Assembly: GCA_020891255.1 (NCBI GenBank)
Contig: BQFW01000002.1
Span: 2,790,001 to 2,854,000 of the forward strand
Length of the DNA stretch: 64,000 nt
DNA from: Entomortierella parvispora E1425
Lineage: Eukaryota; Fungi; Mortierellomycota
Direction: 5' to 3'
Shown piece after piece: positions 14,030 through 21,798 of this stretch. The translations under genes and the position numbers were made by a program. Numbering within the stretch: position 1 is the stretch's first letter; every line of letters begins with the position of its first letter. Under the pieces are notes generated by a model. That model was not told the DNA's origin, did not search any database, and was given only the letters and a program-made list of their open reading frames with translations.

Positions 14030-15545
14030 CTACGAGGAACGGAAGTTGTAGTCAAGGGCAGGCTTGTTGGACAAGATCTGTTCAATGCTCTCCAACACCT
14101 CGTCCGTCAATTGCTTGGCAATCTGGACCGCCTTTACGTTCTCCTCCACCTGCGAGGGCTTTGAGGCACCAGTGATTACCGAGGAAACATTTTTGTTTCG
14201 CAAGCACCAGGCCAAGGCCAACTGAGAGCGGGTGCAGCCCACTTTCTCGGCAATATCTCCAAGCTTGATAACCTTTGCAATCTTGACACGACCGTCCTCG
14301 CTCTCGAGTCCGTCACGGAGACGCTTCATCACTGGGTTTTCAGTGATGGCCAGGCGACTGTCCGAGGGGATAGTGTCGTTGTACTTGCCAGTCAAGAGTC
14401 CCGAGGCCAGAGGGGACCACGTGGTCGTGCCCATGCCAAAGTTCTTGTACAAGGGGAGGTATTCCTTCTCGACGCGATCGCGATGGAACATGTTGTACTG
14501 GGGTTGCTCCATCTATCAATTTTTAATTTGTCATACAGAAGAAAACAGGAACGTTAGCCTAGTGCGCCACAATAGAGAAAAAGAAATGATGCCATTCGTC
14601 TATCGGGACAAGCGCCATCCATCTTGCTTTCTCTCTTTCAGGTTTATGTTTATCCGGAAAGCCCTCTTGCGTGGGGGCGCGTGTACAACGCGCACGCAAG
14701 TGGAGGAGAGAGGGGAGGACGAATAACGACGAAGAAGCTCTTTCGCTTAAACAAGATTTTTTTTTCCTTCTCACATACCAATGGTCCGATCAGGTTCAGG
14801 CGGCTGGCCACAGCGTGAGCCTCTGTGATCTGCTGAGCGCTCCACTCGGATGTTCCCCAGTAAAACGCTTTGCCCTGGTTAATAACGTGGTTGAAGGCTC
14901 GGACAATCTCCTCCATGGGCGTGTCGGGATCGGGTCGGTGAGCATAGAGCAAATCCACATAATCCAATTGCAAGCGCTTCAGAGATGCATCCGTTCCCTC
15001 GACAATGTGCTTGCGAGACAATCCACGGTCATTAGGTCCCTTGCCTCCCCAGAAGATCTTTGTCGAGATGACGAGATCTGATCGCTTCCAGCCGAATTTG
15101 CGGATGGCCACTCCCATGTCAATCTCGCATTGTCCACCCGAGTAGACCTGTTGAATCGTCGAATAAAGATAGAAAAAAACATGTCAGCGCGAACATGGTT
15201 CTGAAGAAGACCTGATTTCCAGAGGGTCGTGATTATGTCACTTGGTTATCCCTGGCGATGCACCCGATCCCTTTACCTCGGCGGTATCGAAAAAGTTGAT
15301 ACCGAGATCAAAGGCGGTCTTCATACATTGCTGAGCAACCTCAGGGCCGACCTGACCACCTGCGTCATTGTGGAGAAAACGAGAATATTGTTTAGGACAG
15401 CCGTTGCAAGACAGGACGGAACGCGAAAAAAAAAAAAGAAAAAAAAAACTGGAAGCATCATCAAATGTGTACCATAAGTGACCCAGCCGCCGAGGGAAAG
15501 GCAAGAGACCATGAGGCCGCTGTTTCCAAGGTAACGATACTCCAT
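14030..15545 (-). CDS. Aldo-keto reductase, voltage-gated K+ channel beta-subunit (Kv-beta)-like, 4 exons
   Basis: MEYRYLGNSGLMVSCLSLGGW, GINFFDTAEVYSGG, SDLVISTKIFWGG, LDYVDLLYAHRPD, QPQYNMFHR and WSPLASGLLTGKY. Canonical introns 15360-15472, 15148-15276 and 14513-14778. Confidence 0.93.
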
Positions 15546-15717: not shown

Positions 15718-17534
15718 TCAGAGCCTGGACTCGCGCTGCTTGCGTGCACGTTCTTCGTTTTGCATCTTGACCAAATGCTCCTGCTTGCGCCAATACGCAA
15801 GTGTCCGCGCATCCAAACGCTCTACCGGCTTCTTCTCGACTGTGCATTCTTCCGTGAACGTAATCGCCTCTCTCTTTTGCACGCCAACATCGGAAGGCAA
15901 CAACGAGTTCAGTCCGTGTCTCAATCCATGCTCCCGGCTCGTCTCACCCCAGGCAAAGAGGATCCAGACCTTCATCATCTTTTTGTTCAAGGCCTTCTCC
16001 CCCTCTGTAAACATGTCCAGATACGTGTCTGATCCAAAGACAAACGGTAACTCTGCTGCGTGATGCGCTCCCAGGCCCAAGTTCATATCCTCTACAATCT
16101 GAAGAGGGCGGTCAAAATGAAATCGACTCATTTCTAGAGGTTCCTTTCGAAGTCCCGTTGCGCCTCCACCCATGAGAGCTTGACTTGTAACATGGAGCGG
16201 ATAGAGGAAGACAGAGTCACTCAAGACAACAGCCGAGATCTGGGCTGCCTCGGCGTCTGTCTTGGGAAGACCATAGATGGCTTCGAATTCCTTCTCCATG
16301 CCAGGGGCACAATGTTTGGCAAAGAAGCGAGGCCAACGCTTCAAAGTGCGAGCACCCAGAACTGGCACAAACATGACACCCTCATCTCGGCAATCTCCTA
16401 ACATCACAGACTTGAGGCCAGGGTCATACCGAGAGGGATCGTGCACCCATTCGCGCGTTTCGCCACAGATGAGGACGTTGTCAATTGTTGGCAAAAACAT
16501 GCCGACTTTGCCATTGTCTGCAGCCTTGACGAGGTCTTTGGCAGGGATCTTTTTCAGTCTAGCCAACTTTTCGGCGCCAGAGAGTTCAGTCTTGTCGAGT
16601 CCGAAATGCTTGCACAGATTATTAAAGTATCTCTGACCCTCAATTTCAGCTCGGCCGGCCATCATGGTTGTCACACATCCAGACTGGAGGATAGCACGGT
16701 GGAAAAGTCCATGGTGGGACTTGATGGACATATGGTAGCCGATCGAGGCCGCTCCTGCAGACTCACCAAAGACGGTAATATCCTTCGCATTGCCTCCAAA
16801 AGCCCCAATGTGATCTCGAACCCATTCGAATGCAATCTTTTGATCCAAGAGACCCCAATTGCCGACGCTCTTTTCGTTGTTAGTGCTCGAGAGTCTGGTA
16901 TCTGACTTGACATCCTGAACCAGCTCAGCGGAGGAGAGGAACCCAAAGTAGTTCAGGCGGTAGTTCATGGTGACAACAATAACCGGGCGACCGAGGGCCT
17001 TGATCGAGTGGGCGACCAGATTGGAGGCTTCGTAGAGGTTCATAGCATTGCTTCCGTCCTTGTAGCTACCACCGTGGATCCATACCATAACAGGAATCAG
17101 GGGTTTGTTCTTGGTCTTGTCGAGCTGATCATGAGGACCGAAAATATTGAGGTTGAGGCAGTGTTCTTCATTGTAGACCCTGCTGTAGGCCTCTTCGTCG
17201 TCTTCGTCCACACCGTCCATGCTCATGCTCACGAGCGGATTTTCACTCATCGGTTGGTGACAGACTGGCCTGCAGCAGAAAAGGGAGGGGTCGCAGTTAG
17301 CCTAGGATTGGAGTTAACTTGATCTCACTGAGTACAAAAGACACCAAAGACCTTTTACCCTTGCACGGTTGCATCCCTGACACCGGTCCAGGGTGCAGCT
17401 TTGACAGCTGGGCGCCAGCGCTCAGGAACAATAGCATAAGGAACGTTCAGGAACTTTGCCACGAAGGGCTGGTTCTCGGCTTGCATGCCCTGCAATCTGC
17501 CGAGGTTTGGAATGTTGACTTGTGGACCCGCCAT
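15718..17534 (-). CDS. Type-B carboxylesterase/lipase, predicted active
   Basis: Exon 1 17534-17359 (MAGPQVNIPNLGRLQG...RWRP...RDAT), intron 17270-17358. Motifs WIHGGSY, NYRLNYFGF, NWGLLDQ, FGESAG (catalytic Ser), GDCRDEG (Glu) and GAHHAAELPFVFG (His). Confidence 0.93.
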
Positions 17535-18197
17535 CGTCTGTGACTATGAGAATGGAAGAATGAGTGGAGAGGAAGGAGGGAGTGATGGAAAGAATCAACA
17601 AGTAGGATTCAGCGGAATGGGGGAAGCGGAGGTGAAGAGAGAATCGAGATACTTGGTCGTTTAAAACTGAGTTTTTGGCCACGACGTCCCGGCTGGTGCT
17701 GGCCTTTTTTTTTTTCTTTTTTCACTGAATCCCTTATCCCCAAAGCCAAAACGGGGAGCGAGCCGAGAGGCGCGTGTGGGCGGATGCTCTTTTCGCGTGC
17801 TCTCTTGTTCTTTCTCTTGTTGCCGATCGCTTCCTGTTGTTGCTACCATTGCCACGGTGGCCAAGACTGCAGTGTCTTTCCTTGGATGGACACGTCCAAA
17901 GAGGATGCGGTCCAGGAAGGAAAGAGTCGCAGGATGGAACGTCTTTCGCTTTCCTCCCACACCCCGCCCACCGTCGTCATTGGACGACCATTTAAGGCAT
18001 GTGCCGCACGTTCCTCTTTTTGCTTGTCGTTCTTCTCTTCTCCCGCCAGGTTGACCATTCATTCGCTCATTCCTTCATCCTTTCTCTTCCATCTTTCTTC
18101 TTCTTGCTCATTCTCTTTCATTCTCTGCACACCGCCCACTCCCAAGAAGACAGCGCAACCTATCTCTTGATCGTCTTTATCTCAGATTCCGATATCA
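17535..18197. promoter_or_regulatory. Putative bidirectional promoter shared by the two divergent carboxylesterase paralogs
   Basis: About 660 bp separate the two start codons, with pyrimidine-rich 5'-UTR-like tracts facing each gene. Confidence 0.55.
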
Positions 18198-20339
18198 ATG
18201 ACTGCCTCCCCACCTGCTTACACTGTGGGCGTTGACTCTGTTCCCATATCCATAGCCCTTCCTTCCCCTTCTCAGCCCTCTTCTGAAGCAAAAGACCAAT
18301 CCAGCTTCAAGGGGCCCACAGTCTTGATTCCATCACTTGGTCAACTTCAAGGAAAAGTCGAAACCATAACGGATGACGCCTACCCTGTAGCCTCCTTCCT
18401 AAACGTTCCTTTTGCCACCGTCACTGAGCGATGGCGCCCCGCAGTCAAGCCCACTCCATGGGAAGGCATTCGAGACGCCACCAACTTTGGGTAAGGAGCA
18501 ACCACCATGGCGCACTTTTTTTTTTTCGATTCTCGGAGTCGACAGAAATTAATAATGCCTCACAAAAAAAAAAAAAAAAAAAAAAAAAAATCGTGAAAAA
18601 TCACTCGTCGCTAGGCCAAGCCCTCCACAACAGACCAAGAGCCATCCGTTTGTCAAACTCTTTTCGGGATTAGCAGAGCAGGTCGACTATGACAGGACCC
18701 AAAATGAACGGGACTGTCTCAACTGCAATATTTTCTTACCGAGCGCTCAGGCGCTTCAGCACAGGATCGCGGTCGATCAGGAGGCAGGACCTCAAATCGA
18801 ACAAGATATCGGTCATCCGACCTGTTTGCCGGTCTTGGTTTGGGTTGTCGGTGGTGCACTTAAGACTGGAGCCAATTCGACCCCTCTTTACAATGGAACG
18901 GAATTAGTGAGAACCTCGATCGAACGAGGTACACCCATGATCGTCGTGACTTTGAACTATCGACTCAACCATTTCGGATTTTTGGCATCAAAGCAGTTGG
19001 TCACCGCCACCAAGGAGGCTTATGAACGCGAGGAAGAATCCACAAAGCAATGGTATGGAGAGTCAGTCGGTAATTGGGGATTGCTGGACGTGGCGATGGG
19101 ACTGGAATGGATTCAGGACCATATCGCGGCGTTTGGAGGGAACCCGAAACGCGTCACTGTCATGGGAGAGGCTGCGGGAGCTAGTTTGATATCGTATATG
19201 CTACAGATCCCACAGTTCCATGGATTGTTGGACCGGGCTATCCTTCAGTCTGGAGCGGCTTCGAGTTTGCCAGCTGTGTTTCCAGAGTATGAGGGACAGC
19301 GTTACTTTGATGAACTTTGCCAACAGTTCGACGTAGCATTGGATCAAGGATTATCCCCAGGAGATATATTGGAGAAACTTCGGGGTGTGTCTGAGAAAGA
19401 GTTGGCAGAGTCGATGAATGACTGCAAGACTTTATTTTTTCGACCGACCATTGATGGCGTTGTTGTGAAGAATGATGCTCGATTGAGCGCCCATGATTCG
19501 TCTAGATATGATCCAAAGTTGAATTGGGTGATGATCGGAACCTGTGCTGAGGAAGGTACGTTATTACCAAACTATGAATGCTGCTCCTTGAACTGAGCGT
19601 CCAATCTTTCGTCCATGGTAATTTATACTCTTCGTTGTTTCTTTTAGGAACGGCTCTAAACCCTCAATTGGGAGCCACCACGTTAGACACTTTTGCCAAA
19701 CTGAAAGCCAGGATCTGTGGCGATCGGTCAGCTGAGGCCGAAATATTCGATGAATTGTTTGGGGTCCCTACAACAGATGATGAGGCTTCCACCATCTCGA
19801 GCAGAGTGTTGAGTCATGGCAACTTCAAATATCCAGCACTGCAGGCTAGCGAGGCGATTTTATCCCATCCGATCTGTCAATTGAGTCGTTACCATTTCGA
19901 CCGCAAGACGGACAAGATTGAGGGCATGATCCCGGGTCTTGGTGCTCATCAGGGAGTGGATCTATATTTCATCTTTGGTGATCGTGAGGTGTCGGCTTCG
20001 TTGTTATCCCCGGAAGAGATGGCGTTTGGGAAAAAGGTACAGGAGATCTGGATCGAGTTTACAACCGCTAAATCTCCCGAGGCTTCTTTCTTGATCTCTA
20101 AAGTCAACTATGTGATCCCACTGAGTGATCAAGACAAGGAGCTGCAGCAGGTGGATGAGGATCCAAAGGAGGCTCTCGTCTTTGGACAGGATCTTCAAGT
20201 CCGGGAGGCCGCTGTGGAGAGGATGTCAAGGGACGAGATTGCATTCTGGAAACGATCTCATGCCCATGCAGCTGAACAAGCGAAGCTAGGACGAGGATCC
20301 GAAGTAGGATTTGACTTTTTTCGACCATTAACTTGTTGA
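18198..20339 (+). CDS. Type-B carboxylesterase-like protein lacking the catalytic Ser (GEAAG); probable pseudoenzyme, 3 exons
   Basis: Introns 18491-18614 and 19556-19647 join in frame. Motifs RWRP, RDAT, ERDCLNCNIF, NYRLNHFGF, NWGLLDV, VMGEAAG, GTCAEEG and GAHQGVDL. Confidence 0.9.
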
Positions 20340-20492: not shown

Positions 20493-21798
20493 ATGGAAGA
20501 AAGATCAAAGGCAAGAAGGAAAAGCATGTTCCCTGTGGTGCCCCCTGGGCCGGCCGAAAAGCGACGGGAGTTTCTTGAATACTTCAGTGATCCTCCAAAT
20601 GCTGTCGCCCTGTTGGCCAACGGTTTGAAAGGCAAGAAAACAACCTATCTTGCTCTGCCCCTATCTACGCCTGAAGAGAACTGAGGAGTGGAAAAGAAAA
20701 GGCAGAGAGAAGAGCTTTAGAGGCTAACTGAGATTTGACTCGCCATCTTCAGGAATATCATTGGCCGAAATCGGGCACCGAGATAGCGCTGAGGAGAAGG
20801 CTGAGGGACAAGCTCAAGAGCATGAACAAAGGGAAGGATCGGGAAAAGACGTTCGATTCTCAATGTTGAGGCACCGACGGTATGGAGAGAACCAAGCCTA
20901 CATCCTTGTGGCTGTCCAGTTCCTCATTCGGCAGTTTGAAGAACTCTTGACCAAACCTTGGGAAAGCCAAATGCTGTTCGCCTTGTCGCGAGGAAAGTTC
21001 TTTGAGTCGTTGGCCAAGAAACTGGAGAAGGAGGAGCCTGTCCTTCGGCGTGTGTCGGGCCCTACCCTAAGGTCCATGTTCGAGAGGGTCGTCCAAAAGT
21101 ATGAGGATCTGCAAAACTTCAAACGATCCGAACCAGGCGGTATATTTGCAACAACCATTCTCATGGATAAGGTGGGTCTCATGTATCGGTTGCATCAACA
21201 CTTTGTGAACGCCGGAGTGCAGATGGCCAGCACCGAGGAGTCGGCAGATTCAGAAGAAAAGATGGAAGGACCAGAGCCGTGGATTACTCGTGGGGTCAAT
21301 GCGCATGATCCCGGACCATCGTCTTCGTCTTCGTCTTCAACAGCAATGGCGAAAGCAGCAACACATACGGAGGCCACTGTAACGGCAACATCAACATCAA
21401 CAACCACGCCGATCGCAAATGGCGAACTTGCTCGCGATTCTACTGCACCTGATGATATTCTGGAAGAGGCGTTATCGCAGTTGTCAGATTACCGCAAAAG
21501 TATCGTTCAGGCCCTCTCTGCTTGTATCGCCGATTCGAATACACTGAGCGAGGAACAAAACAACCGTCAGTCAAGGTTATCGGTCAGAGTTGATGCGATT
21601 GAGAAGGCCGTCGAAGCTGGTCGTCAGCCAGCAGCACAAGCAACCGAGCAGCAATGGGCCGTGATTGAGGAGCAGAGTCGGCAGCTCATGGTATTGGGCC
21701 AATCTGTGCAGTTCATGTCGGCTCAGGTCCAAATGCAGAGTGAAGCCATCAACACGATGCAAGCATCCACGATGGAGATCCTTCGACGTCTTCAATAA
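20493..21798 (+). CDS. Uncharacterised protein with a possible Myb/SANT-like (trihelix) region and a C-terminal coiled coil; 2 exons joined by a GC-AG intron
   Basis: Exon 20493-20631, intron 20632-20752 (AG|GCAAG...GCTAAC...TTCAG), then a long ORF to 21798. The central FFESLAKKL...RRVSGPTLRSMFERVVQKY segment resembles SANT-like helices; the C-terminus has a heptad pattern. Confidence 0.6.

What the first reader, a model, noticed from the sequence alone, without database searches (positions are those of the whole stretch)
18198..20339. Carboxylesterase pseudoenzyme (Ser to Ala) with a gained N-terminal PPxY motif: candidate ligand receptor or Rsp5/Nedd4 adaptor
Seen: the nucleophile elbow is G-E-A-A-G (GCT at 19171-19173) instead of GESAG, and the oxyanion loop is WVVGGA instead of WIHGGS. 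The Glu (CAEEG) and His (GAHQG) positions and the full reading frame are retained. An extension of about 36 aa, absent from the active paralog, begins MTASPPAY. Known: PPxY binds the WW domains of Rsp5/Nedd4 ligases; catalytically dead members of this fold (neuroligin-type) act as interaction modules; and hydrolase-fold proteins such as GID1 and D14/KAI2 are small-molecule receptors coupled to ubiquitin ligases. Inference: this may be an undescribed fungal lipid/ester sensor linked to ubiquitination.
Basis: partly seen in the sequence, partly recalled or inferred. Interest (0 to 1): 0.8.

Follow-up and report, generated by a model that had tools for sequence, protein, structure and literature searches.

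The report
Conserved dead carboxylesterase in a Mortierellaceae fungus
This is an intact fungal gene for a carboxylesterase-fold protein that has lost two of its three catalytic residues yet has been kept by selection in at least four related soil fungi, so it is a real non-enzymatic relative of an esterase, but the proposed link to ubiquitin ligases through a PPxY motif is not supported.

Summary
The gene has three exons (18198-18490, 18615-19555, 19648-20339) and encodes 641 aa of the type-B carboxylesterase family (Pfam PF00135). Its nucleophile elbow is GEAAG, with the Ala codon GCT at 19171-19173.

The invariant His of 102 family members, which aligns to the His of human AChE's GVPHGYE, is Gln513 here. 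The retained His512 sits at a variable position. So two of three triad residues are gone (Ser to Ala, His to Gln), and only Glu411 remains.

Both changes are shared by four orthologs: the window, Gryganskiella cystojenkinii and two metagenomic species. These form one clade nested among active-looking Mortierellaceae esterases. The core is under purifying selection (omega 0.079, CI 0.058-0.105), equal to the active head-to-head neighbour (0.076). It is therefore neither a sequencing error nor a decaying copy.

The N-terminal extension of about 38 aa is conserved in presence, predicted disordered and weakly constrained (omega about 0.5). PPAY is kept in one close species and absent from G. cystojenkinii.

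Best reading: a cytosolic, non-hydrolytic binding or regulatory protein. The Rsp5-adaptor idea is unsupported. An earlier scan note (s1-194047, unchecked) reports a similar pseudoenzyme nearby in this genome.

The parts
18198..18490 (+). Exon 1 (aa 1-98, phase 2 at its end): N-terminal extension plus the first strands of the carboxylesterase domain
   Evidence: ATG is the first start after an in-frame stop. Donor is G|GTAAGG. Pfam COesterase matches aa 41-97. The NCBI model of ortholog P0156 has the same exon structure.
18198..18311 (+). N-terminal extension of about 38 aa (S/P/A-rich), absent from the paralog
   Evidence: The paralog starts MAGPQV at the point matching aa 39. Lead length is 42-45 aa in the three orthologs with known N-termini, against 7-33 aa in the active subfamily. 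The matching residues 1-33 of the ortholog have pLDDT below 50. Omega is 0.49.
18210..18221 (+). PPAY (aa 5-8)
   Evidence: Present here and in L002/L003/L005. Absent from the G. cystojenkinii ortholog. PPxY is rare in the fetched family proteins (9 in 194,164 residues).
18491..18614 (+). Intron 1 (124 nt, GT-AG), containing a poly-A run
   Evidence: The paralog has an intron at the same position.
18615..19555 (+). Exon 2 (941 nt): oxyanion loop, nucleophile elbow and acid loop
   Evidence: Pfam COesterase, E = 9e-48. Exon 2 is also 941 nt in G. cystojenkinii and in the metagenomic species.
18841..18858 (+). Oxyanion loop WVVGGA (aa 174-179)
   Evidence: The four orthologs have W[IV]VGGA. The active subfamily mostly has WIYGGG and the paralog WIHGGS.
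19165..19179 (+). Nucleophile elbow GEAAG (aa 282-286); Ala284 = GCT at 19171-19173 replaces the catalytic Ser
   Evidence: Ser in 100 of 101 other family members and Ala in all four orthologs. The Ala codon is GCT or GCA among orthologs.
19552..19554 (+). Glu411, the retained acid of the triad (the preceding conserved Asp is Glu410 here)
19556..19647 (+). Intron 2 (92 nt, GT-AG)
   Evidence: The position is shared with the orthologs and with M. alpina P0162.
19648..20339 (+). Exon 3, including the stop codon: His loop and C-terminal helices
19947..19952 (+). His512-Gln513; Gln513 (CAG) occupies the catalytic His position
   Evidence: His is invariant (102/102) at this column in the family and Gln in all four orthologs. 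It aligns to the catalytic His of AChE. The Gln codon is CAG or CAA among orthologs.
15718..17534 (-). Head-to-head active-looking paralog (exons 17534-17359 and 17269-15718; 575 aa; GESAG, DEG, AHH), 40% identical to the candidate
   Evidence: The arrangement is conserved in L001 and L002. Omega is 0.076.
17535..18197 (.). Shared divergent intergenic region (663 bp) with two conserved blocks at 17751-17770 and 17997-18016
   Evidence: The blocks align across three species and are unique in the window. They are absent from loci where the paralog lacks this neighbour.

Best explanation
The gene encodes a cytosolic protein with the type-B carboxylesterase (cholinesterase-like) fold. It cannot carry out serine-hydrolase catalysis, because the nucleophile Ser is Ala284 and the general-base His is Gln513.

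Shown:
- It arose once, from an active esterase subfamily that expanded in Mortierellaceae.
- It changed quickly on the stem branch of its clade.
- Since then it has been held under purifying selection as strong as that on its active neighbour.
- The former active-site loops are at least as conserved as the rest of the protein.
- The backbone-donating residues of the oxyanion hole are intact (GGA, and Ala285 after the elbow).

Inferred:
- It still binds an ester or lipid-like ligand in the old pocket without hydrolysing it, acting as a binding, buffering or sensing protein.
- Alternatively or additionally, it pairs with an active family member such as the divergently transcribed neighbour, through the dimer interface usual for this fold.
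- The disordered N-terminal extension is a lineage-specific appendage of unknown role.
- Its PPAY is most likely incidental.
For: - Family and fold: Pfam PF00135 matches all three exons. The AF2 model of ortholog P0156 has pLDDT 91 and pTM 0.91. Its best Foldseek matches are AChE, BChE and CES1, with TM to target 0.75-0.84.
- Dead triad: Ser to Ala and His to Gln at columns that are 99-100% conserved in 103 relatives. The His column is anchored to solved enzymes.
- Conservation: four orthologs at 73-89% identity share both changes, with synonymous codon variation at each.
- Selection: core omega is 0.079 (CI 0.058-0.105) at dS 0.88, against 0.076 for the paralog in the same species pair.
- Phylogeny: the dead clade has SH-aLRT 100, a stem of 0.39 substitutions per site and tips of 0.05-0.17. 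It is nested in the active subfamily.
- Fold-level conservation: 94 of 108 family-conserved columns are kept in all four orthologs. The five columns changed in all four include Ser284, His513 and the Asp before the catalytic Glu.
- Active-site loops are 76-90% invariant, against 70% for the core as a whole.
- Localisation: no signal peptide or TM segment (maximum 19-residue Kyte-Doolittle mean 1.28).
- Gene order: the head-to-head arrangement with the paralog and the conserved intergenic blocks occur in three species.
Against: - There is no direct evidence for any ligand or partner.
- No expression data were available.
- Only four orthologs exist in the collections, and only three have an N-terminus.
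- dS is saturated for comparisons with G. cystojenkinii, so omega is reliable only for the closer pairs.
- Higher conservation of the active-site loops could reflect fold stability alone.
- Adjacency to the paralog does not show co-regulation or heterodimerisation.
Confidence: 0.6

Rival explanations
1. The protein is a ligand receptor or adaptor coupled to the Rsp5/Nedd4 ubiquitin ligase through its N-terminal PPAY, which would bind the ligase's WW domains.
For: - PPAY lies at aa 5-8 in a segment predicted to be disordered and accessible.
- It is conserved in one related species, with synonymous changes in the Ala and Tyr codons.
- PPxY is rare in this family.
- The extension is kept at similar length in all three orthologs with known N-termini.
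Against: - The G. cystojenkinii ortholog, which shares the dead site, has no PPxY in its extension or in any frame upstream.
- The extension evolves at omega about 0.49, with a CI reaching 1.0.
- At 58% identity, retention between the two close species is expected about one time in five.
Confidence: 0.1
2. It is still an enzyme with a different chemistry. It would use His512, Glu411 and the intact oxyanion hole, or another nucleophile, for a non-canonical reaction such as direct water activation or a lyase or transferase-type step.
For: - Glu411, His512 and the oxyanion-hole residues are invariant among the orthologs.
- The active-site loops are the best conserved parts of the protein.
- The constraint equals that on the active paralog.
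Against: - Both the nucleophile and the general base are lost together.
- His512 sits at a position that varies freely in active relatives.
- From my own knowledge, no type-B carboxylesterase member with Ala at the elbow has known activity.
Confidence: 0.12
3. It is a structural or regulatory partner only. The pocket is irrelevant, and the protein works through surface interactions, for example as a heterodimer with the neighbouring active esterase, as many pseudoenzymes regulate their active paralogs.
For: - The head-to-head arrangement, with a conserved intergenic region of about 640-660 bp and two conserved blocks, occurs in three species.
- Members of this fold commonly dimerise through a four-helix bundle (PMC5943944).
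- The C-terminal helices are well conserved.
Against: - The adjacency may be only a product of the lineage's history.
- The two proteins are just 40% identical.
- No interaction data exist.
Confidence: 0.15
4. It is a sequencing error, a private mutation or a decaying duplicate (pseudogene).
For: A single-base change could turn a Ser codon (TCN) into GCN.
Against: - Four independent assemblies share Ala and Gln.
- The ORFs are intact and the introns conserved.
- Core omega is 0.079.
Confidence: 0.01

Closest known systems
Type-B carboxylesterase/lipase family (Pfam PF00135; AChE, BChE, CES1, pNB esterase)
   Same: Sequence family and fold. It has the oxyanion-loop GG, the elbow geometry G-E-x-A-G, the acid Glu and the overall domain length.
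   Different: The nucleophile Ser is Ala and the catalytic His is Gln. The first disulfide Cys is lost (GPSPPQ against GPVCHQ). There is no signal peptide. A disordered N-terminal lead of about 38 aa is added.
Non-catalytic cholinesterase-like proteins of animals (neuroligins, gliotactin, neurotactin, glutactin, thyroglobulin ChEL domain)
   Same: The same fold with a non-functional triad, retained under selection for a non-enzymatic role (PMC5943944).
   Different: Those proteins are extracellular or secretory-pathway proteins of animals, most with a membrane anchor or embedded in a larger protein. This one is fungal and apparently cytosolic, and it arose independently inside a Mortierellaceae esterase expansion. 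Neuroligins did appear among the sequence matches, but no closer than active enzymes did.
Active Mortierellaceae subfamily (e.g. P0162 Mortierella alpina, P0002 Linnemannia zychae)
   Same: 45-49% identity. They share intron 2, GPxPPQQT in place of the Cys loop, and Y/V in place of the His of HGG.
   Different: All of them keep Ser, Glu and His, and their N-terminal leads are shorter (7-33 aa).
GID1 and D14/KAI2 alpha/beta-hydrolase receptors of plants
   Same: An alpha/beta-hydrolase fold used for ligand perception. From my own knowledge, GID1 has lost its His.
   Different: They belong to different subfamilies (the HSL/CXE type and the RsbQ-like type). From my own knowledge, they keep Ser, and D14/KAI2 keep the whole triad and hydrolyse their ligand. 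No F-box or ligase link is evident here. This is an analogy only, and it was not tested.

Membership tests
Type-B carboxylesterase family (Pfam PF00135 COesterase) | Significant match to the family profile over the whole domain | tested here: met
   Exon pieces score 35.7, 163.9 and 27.4 bits, each at or above the 27-bit cut-off, and cover profile positions 4-501.
Type-B carboxylesterase family (Pfam PF00135 COesterase) | Cholinesterase-like alpha/beta-hydrolase fold | tested here: met
   The AF2 model of the 75%-identical ortholog has pLDDT 91. Foldseek top hits are AChE, BChE and CES1 at E about 1e-34. The window protein itself was not folded.
Type-B carboxylesterase family (Pfam PF00135 COesterase) | Catalytic triad Ser-Glu-His (active enzyme) | tested here: not met
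   Ala284 and Gln513 replace Ser and His, and Glu411 is kept. The Ser-containing signature, recalled from PROSITE PS00122, matches the paralog but not the candidate.
Non-catalytic cholinesterase-like adhesion/chaperone proteins (neuroligin type) | COesterase fold without a functional triad | tested here: met
Non-catalytic cholinesterase-like adhesion/chaperone proteins (neuroligin type) | Secretory or extracellular topology (signal peptide, membrane anchor or larger secreted precursor) | tested here: not met
   There is no hydrophobic N-terminus and no TM-grade segment (maximum 19-residue Kyte-Doolittle mean 1.28). The first disulfide Cys is lost.
Non-catalytic cholinesterase-like adhesion/chaperone proteins (neuroligin type) | Common descent with the animal clade | tested here: not met
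   It is nested within a Mortierellaceae-specific active esterase clade.
PPxY-bearing Rsp5/Nedd4 adaptors | PPxY motif in an accessible region | tested here: met
   PPAY lies at aa 5-8. The matching region of the ortholog is predicted disordered.
PPxY-bearing Rsp5/Nedd4 adaptors | Motif conserved among orthologs | tested here: not met
   It is present in 2 of the 3 orthologs with a known N-terminus and absent from G. cystojenkinii. The extension has omega of about 0.49.
PPxY-bearing Rsp5/Nedd4 adaptors | Physical binding to WW domains | not testable with these tools
   This needs a pull-down or a peptide-binding assay.
Alpha/beta-hydrolase small-molecule receptors (GID1, D14/KAI2) | Membership of the HSL/CXE or D14/KAI2 subfamily | tested here: not met
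   The best family is COesterase. Abhydrolase_3 scores 21 bits, below its 25-bit cut-off.
Alpha/beta-hydrolase small-molecule receptors (GID1, D14/KAI2) | Ligand-dependent binding to a ubiquitin-ligase component | not testable with these tools
   No data.

The most novel reading that the evidence does not exclude
This would be a previously undescribed class of intracellular fungal pseudo-carboxylesterase. It would keep the old substrate pocket to bind an ester or lipid without hydrolysing it, in an oleaginous fungal lineage. It would act with its divergently transcribed active neighbour as a sensor-enzyme or regulator-enzyme pair. In some species its disordered N-terminal tail, with PPAY, would couple it to turnover by ubiquitination.
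Probability: 0.12. Interest if true: 0.65.

Novelty: new variant of a known kind. Interest (0 to 1): 0.35.

Why it matters
Catalytically dead members of the cholinesterase/carboxylesterase fold are well known in animals, but only as extracellular adhesion or chaperone modules (PMC5943944). This case arose independently and appears to be cytosolic.

It is also datable. There was one loss event on one branch, and an active neighbour under equal constraint serves as an internal control. That makes it a clean system for asking what a hydrolase pocket is kept for once hydrolysis is gone.

The finding is lineage-restricted, and pseudoenzymes are common in large enzyme families, so it is a modest result rather than a surprising one. 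The most eye-catching part of the original claim, the ubiquitin-ligase coupling, is not supported.

Tried and rejected
- Sequencing error, private mutation or pseudogene: rejected by four orthologs and omega 0.079.
- 'His retained': rejected by the family alignment and by alignments to solved enzymes.
- PPxY as a conserved feature: rejected for G. cystojenkinii, including a search of all frames upstream.
- More orthologs:
  - The 1.84-billion-protein representative search gave nothing closer than 51%.
  - Three word-index searches found P0156 and the fragments P0293 and P0294.
  - The metagenome scan returned only a contig already in hand.
  - Exact look-ups showed that the window's own ORFs are not in the collection and that the clusters are singletons.
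- Relic of this gene next to the paralog in M. alpina or E. chlamydospora: none found, so the adjacency is lineage-specific.
- Literature searches for fungal or Mortierella pseudo-carboxylesterases found nothing specific.
- The full spliced window protein could not be given to the search or folding tools by reference. The exon pieces and the ortholog P0156 were used instead.
- ML pairwise dN/dS was unstable for one saturated pair (P0156 against L002) and was ignored.

Full report
**Gene model**

The region holds a three-exon gene on the + strand: 18198-18490, 18615-19555 and 19648-20339. Its GT-AG introns are 124 and 92 nt, and the product is 641 aa. All three exon pieces match Pfam PF00135 (COesterase). 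The NCBI-annotated ortholog has the same exon structure, including an identical 941-nt exon 2.

An active-looking paralog lies head to head on the - strand, 663 bp away (exons 17534-17359 and 17269-15718). It is 575 aa, carries GESAG, DEG and AHH, and is 40% identical to the candidate.

**Check of the observation**

- GEAAG is at aa 282-286, with Ala284 = GCT at 19171-19173, as reported.
- WVVGGA replaces WIHGGS.
- The N-terminal lead is about 38 aa longer than in the paralog and begins MTASPPAY.
- One point is wrong. In an alignment of 103 active-looking relatives, the second residue of 'AHH' is His in all 102 filled rows, while the first residue varies freely.
- HMMER alignments of the ortholog to human AChE (GVPHGYE) and to a bacterial carboxylesterase (GACHAVE) place the catalytic His opposite the Gln of GAHQG.
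- So the protein has lost both Ser (Ala284) and His (Gln513, CAG at 19950-19952). It keeps only Glu411.

**Where it comes from**

- The family is a large expansion in Mortierellaceae of proteins without signal peptides.
- The nearest genome is Gryganskiella cystojenkinii GCA_015852425.1. Its P0156 (638 aa) is 75% identical and lies in the same head-to-head arrangement, followed by the same downstream gene of about 344 aa.
- Two further orthologs come from metagenome and Logan contigs. One is a 643-aa protein on L002/L003/L005 (85% identical over the whole protein). The other is a partial protein on L006 (89%).
- All four have GEAAG, AHQG (one contig has THQG) and W[IV]VGGA. The codons for Ala (GCT/GCA) and Gln (CAG/CAA) differ synonymously among them.
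- In a maximum-likelihood tree the four form one clade (SH-aLRT 100) inside the active subfamily. The stem is 0.39 substitutions per site and the tips are 0.05-0.17. This points to a single loss, followed by fast change and then renewed constraint.

**Selection**

| Comparison (window vs L002) | dS | omega | 95% bootstrap CI |
|---|---|---|---|
| Candidate core, aa 39-641 | 0.88 | 0.079 | 0.058-0.105 |
| Active neighbour (paralog) | 0.70 | 0.076 | not computed |
| Candidate N-terminal extension, aa 1-38 | 0.66 | 0.49 | 0.19-1.0 |

- Comparisons with G. cystojenkinii are saturated at synonymous sites, but dN is only 0.16-0.18.
- Of 108 columns conserved at 85% or more in the family, 94 are kept in all four orthologs.
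- Five columns are changed in all four: Ser284Ala, His513Gln, Asp410Glu (next to the catalytic Glu), Gln257Val (the LDQ motif) and Lys349Ile/Val.
- The four former active-site loops are 76-90% invariant among the orthologs, against 70% for the core.

**Structure and location**

- AlphaFold2 on P0156 with a 68-row alignment gives pLDDT 91.1 and pTM 0.91. Residues 1-33 fall below pLDDT 50.
- Foldseek finds AChE, BChE, CES1 and a bacterial polyurethane esterase.
- The window protein has no signal-peptide-like or TM-grade hydrophobic segment.
- It has lost the first Cys of the family's disulfide loop (GPSPPQ).
- A cytosolic location is therefore likely. This is inferred, not shown.

**The PPxY question**

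- PPAY at aa 5-8 is real, and PPxY is rare in this family.
- It is conserved in the close metagenomic species.
- It is absent from G. cystojenkinii (MATTTSPPPPPGS), and no frame upstream holds one.
- With 58% identity across the extension, survival of the three fixed residues between the two close species is not significant.
- A long disordered lead is conserved in the dead clade (42-45 aa, against 7-33 aa in active relatives). The motif is not.

**Mechanism**

- Shown: a folded carboxylesterase-type protein without nucleophile or general base, kept by selection in several species.
- Inferred: a non-hydrolytic role. The likeliest is ligand binding in the retained pocket, since the oxyanion-hole residues are intact and the pocket loops are the best conserved parts. 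Partnership with an active relative is also possible.
- The shared intergenic region has two blocks conserved across three species, at 17751-17770 and 17997-18016. Each lies about 200 bp upstream of one of the two genes.
- The blocks are missing from M. alpina and E. chlamydospora loci, where the paralog has no such neighbour. This fits common regulation but does not prove it.

**Comparison with known systems**

It belongs to the type-B carboxylesterase family by sequence and fold, but not as an active enzyme. It resembles the non-catalytic cholinesterase-like proteins of animals (PMC5943944) only in principle. Its origin, topology and taxon all differ. GID1 and D14/KAI2 are analogies from other subfamilies. 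I found no paper describing a fungal counterpart.

**Verdict**

It is an independent, apparently intracellular variant of a known kind. The Rsp5/Nedd4 reading is unsupported. Interest is moderate.

Noticed in passing
window 17751-17770 and 17997-18016: Two roughly 20-nt blocks (ACGGGGAGCGAGCCGAGAGG and GCATGTGCCGCACGTTCCTC, the second holding a GTGC-C-GCAC inverted repeat) lie in the divergent intergenic region. They are conserved in the window, G. cystojenkinii and a metagenomic species despite saturated synonymous divergence. They are absent from M. alpina and E. chlamydospora loci. They are candidate promoter elements for the gene pair.
   Followed up: partly
protein P0016 (606 aa): A relative in another clade of the family has GELSG at the elbow and lacks the acid Glu. 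It may be an independent dead member. It is a singleton and was not checked further.
   Followed up: no
about 39.6 kb before the window start (note s1-194047): An earlier first-reader note reports another intact-ORF carboxylesterase pseudoenzyme beside an active paralog in the same genome. It could not be read from this window.
   Followed up: no
window 14030-15117 (-): An aldo/keto reductase gene, split into two ORFs by an intron, lies next to the active paralog. The same order is seen in M. alpina, E. chlamydospora and L002, so the paralog and reductase are the ancestral neighbours, and the dead esterase's adjacency to the paralog is specific to this lineage (how it arose was not determined).
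   Followed up: partly
window 18504-18591: Intron 1 contains a T-run followed by a poly-A run of about 27 nt. Intron 1 of the L002 ortholog has a T-run and only short A-runs at the matching place.
   Followed up: no
window 20761-21798 (+): The downstream 345-aa ORF has no Pfam match, but a syntenic 344-aa gene exists in G. cystojenkinii (L001 13394-14853).
   Followed up: no
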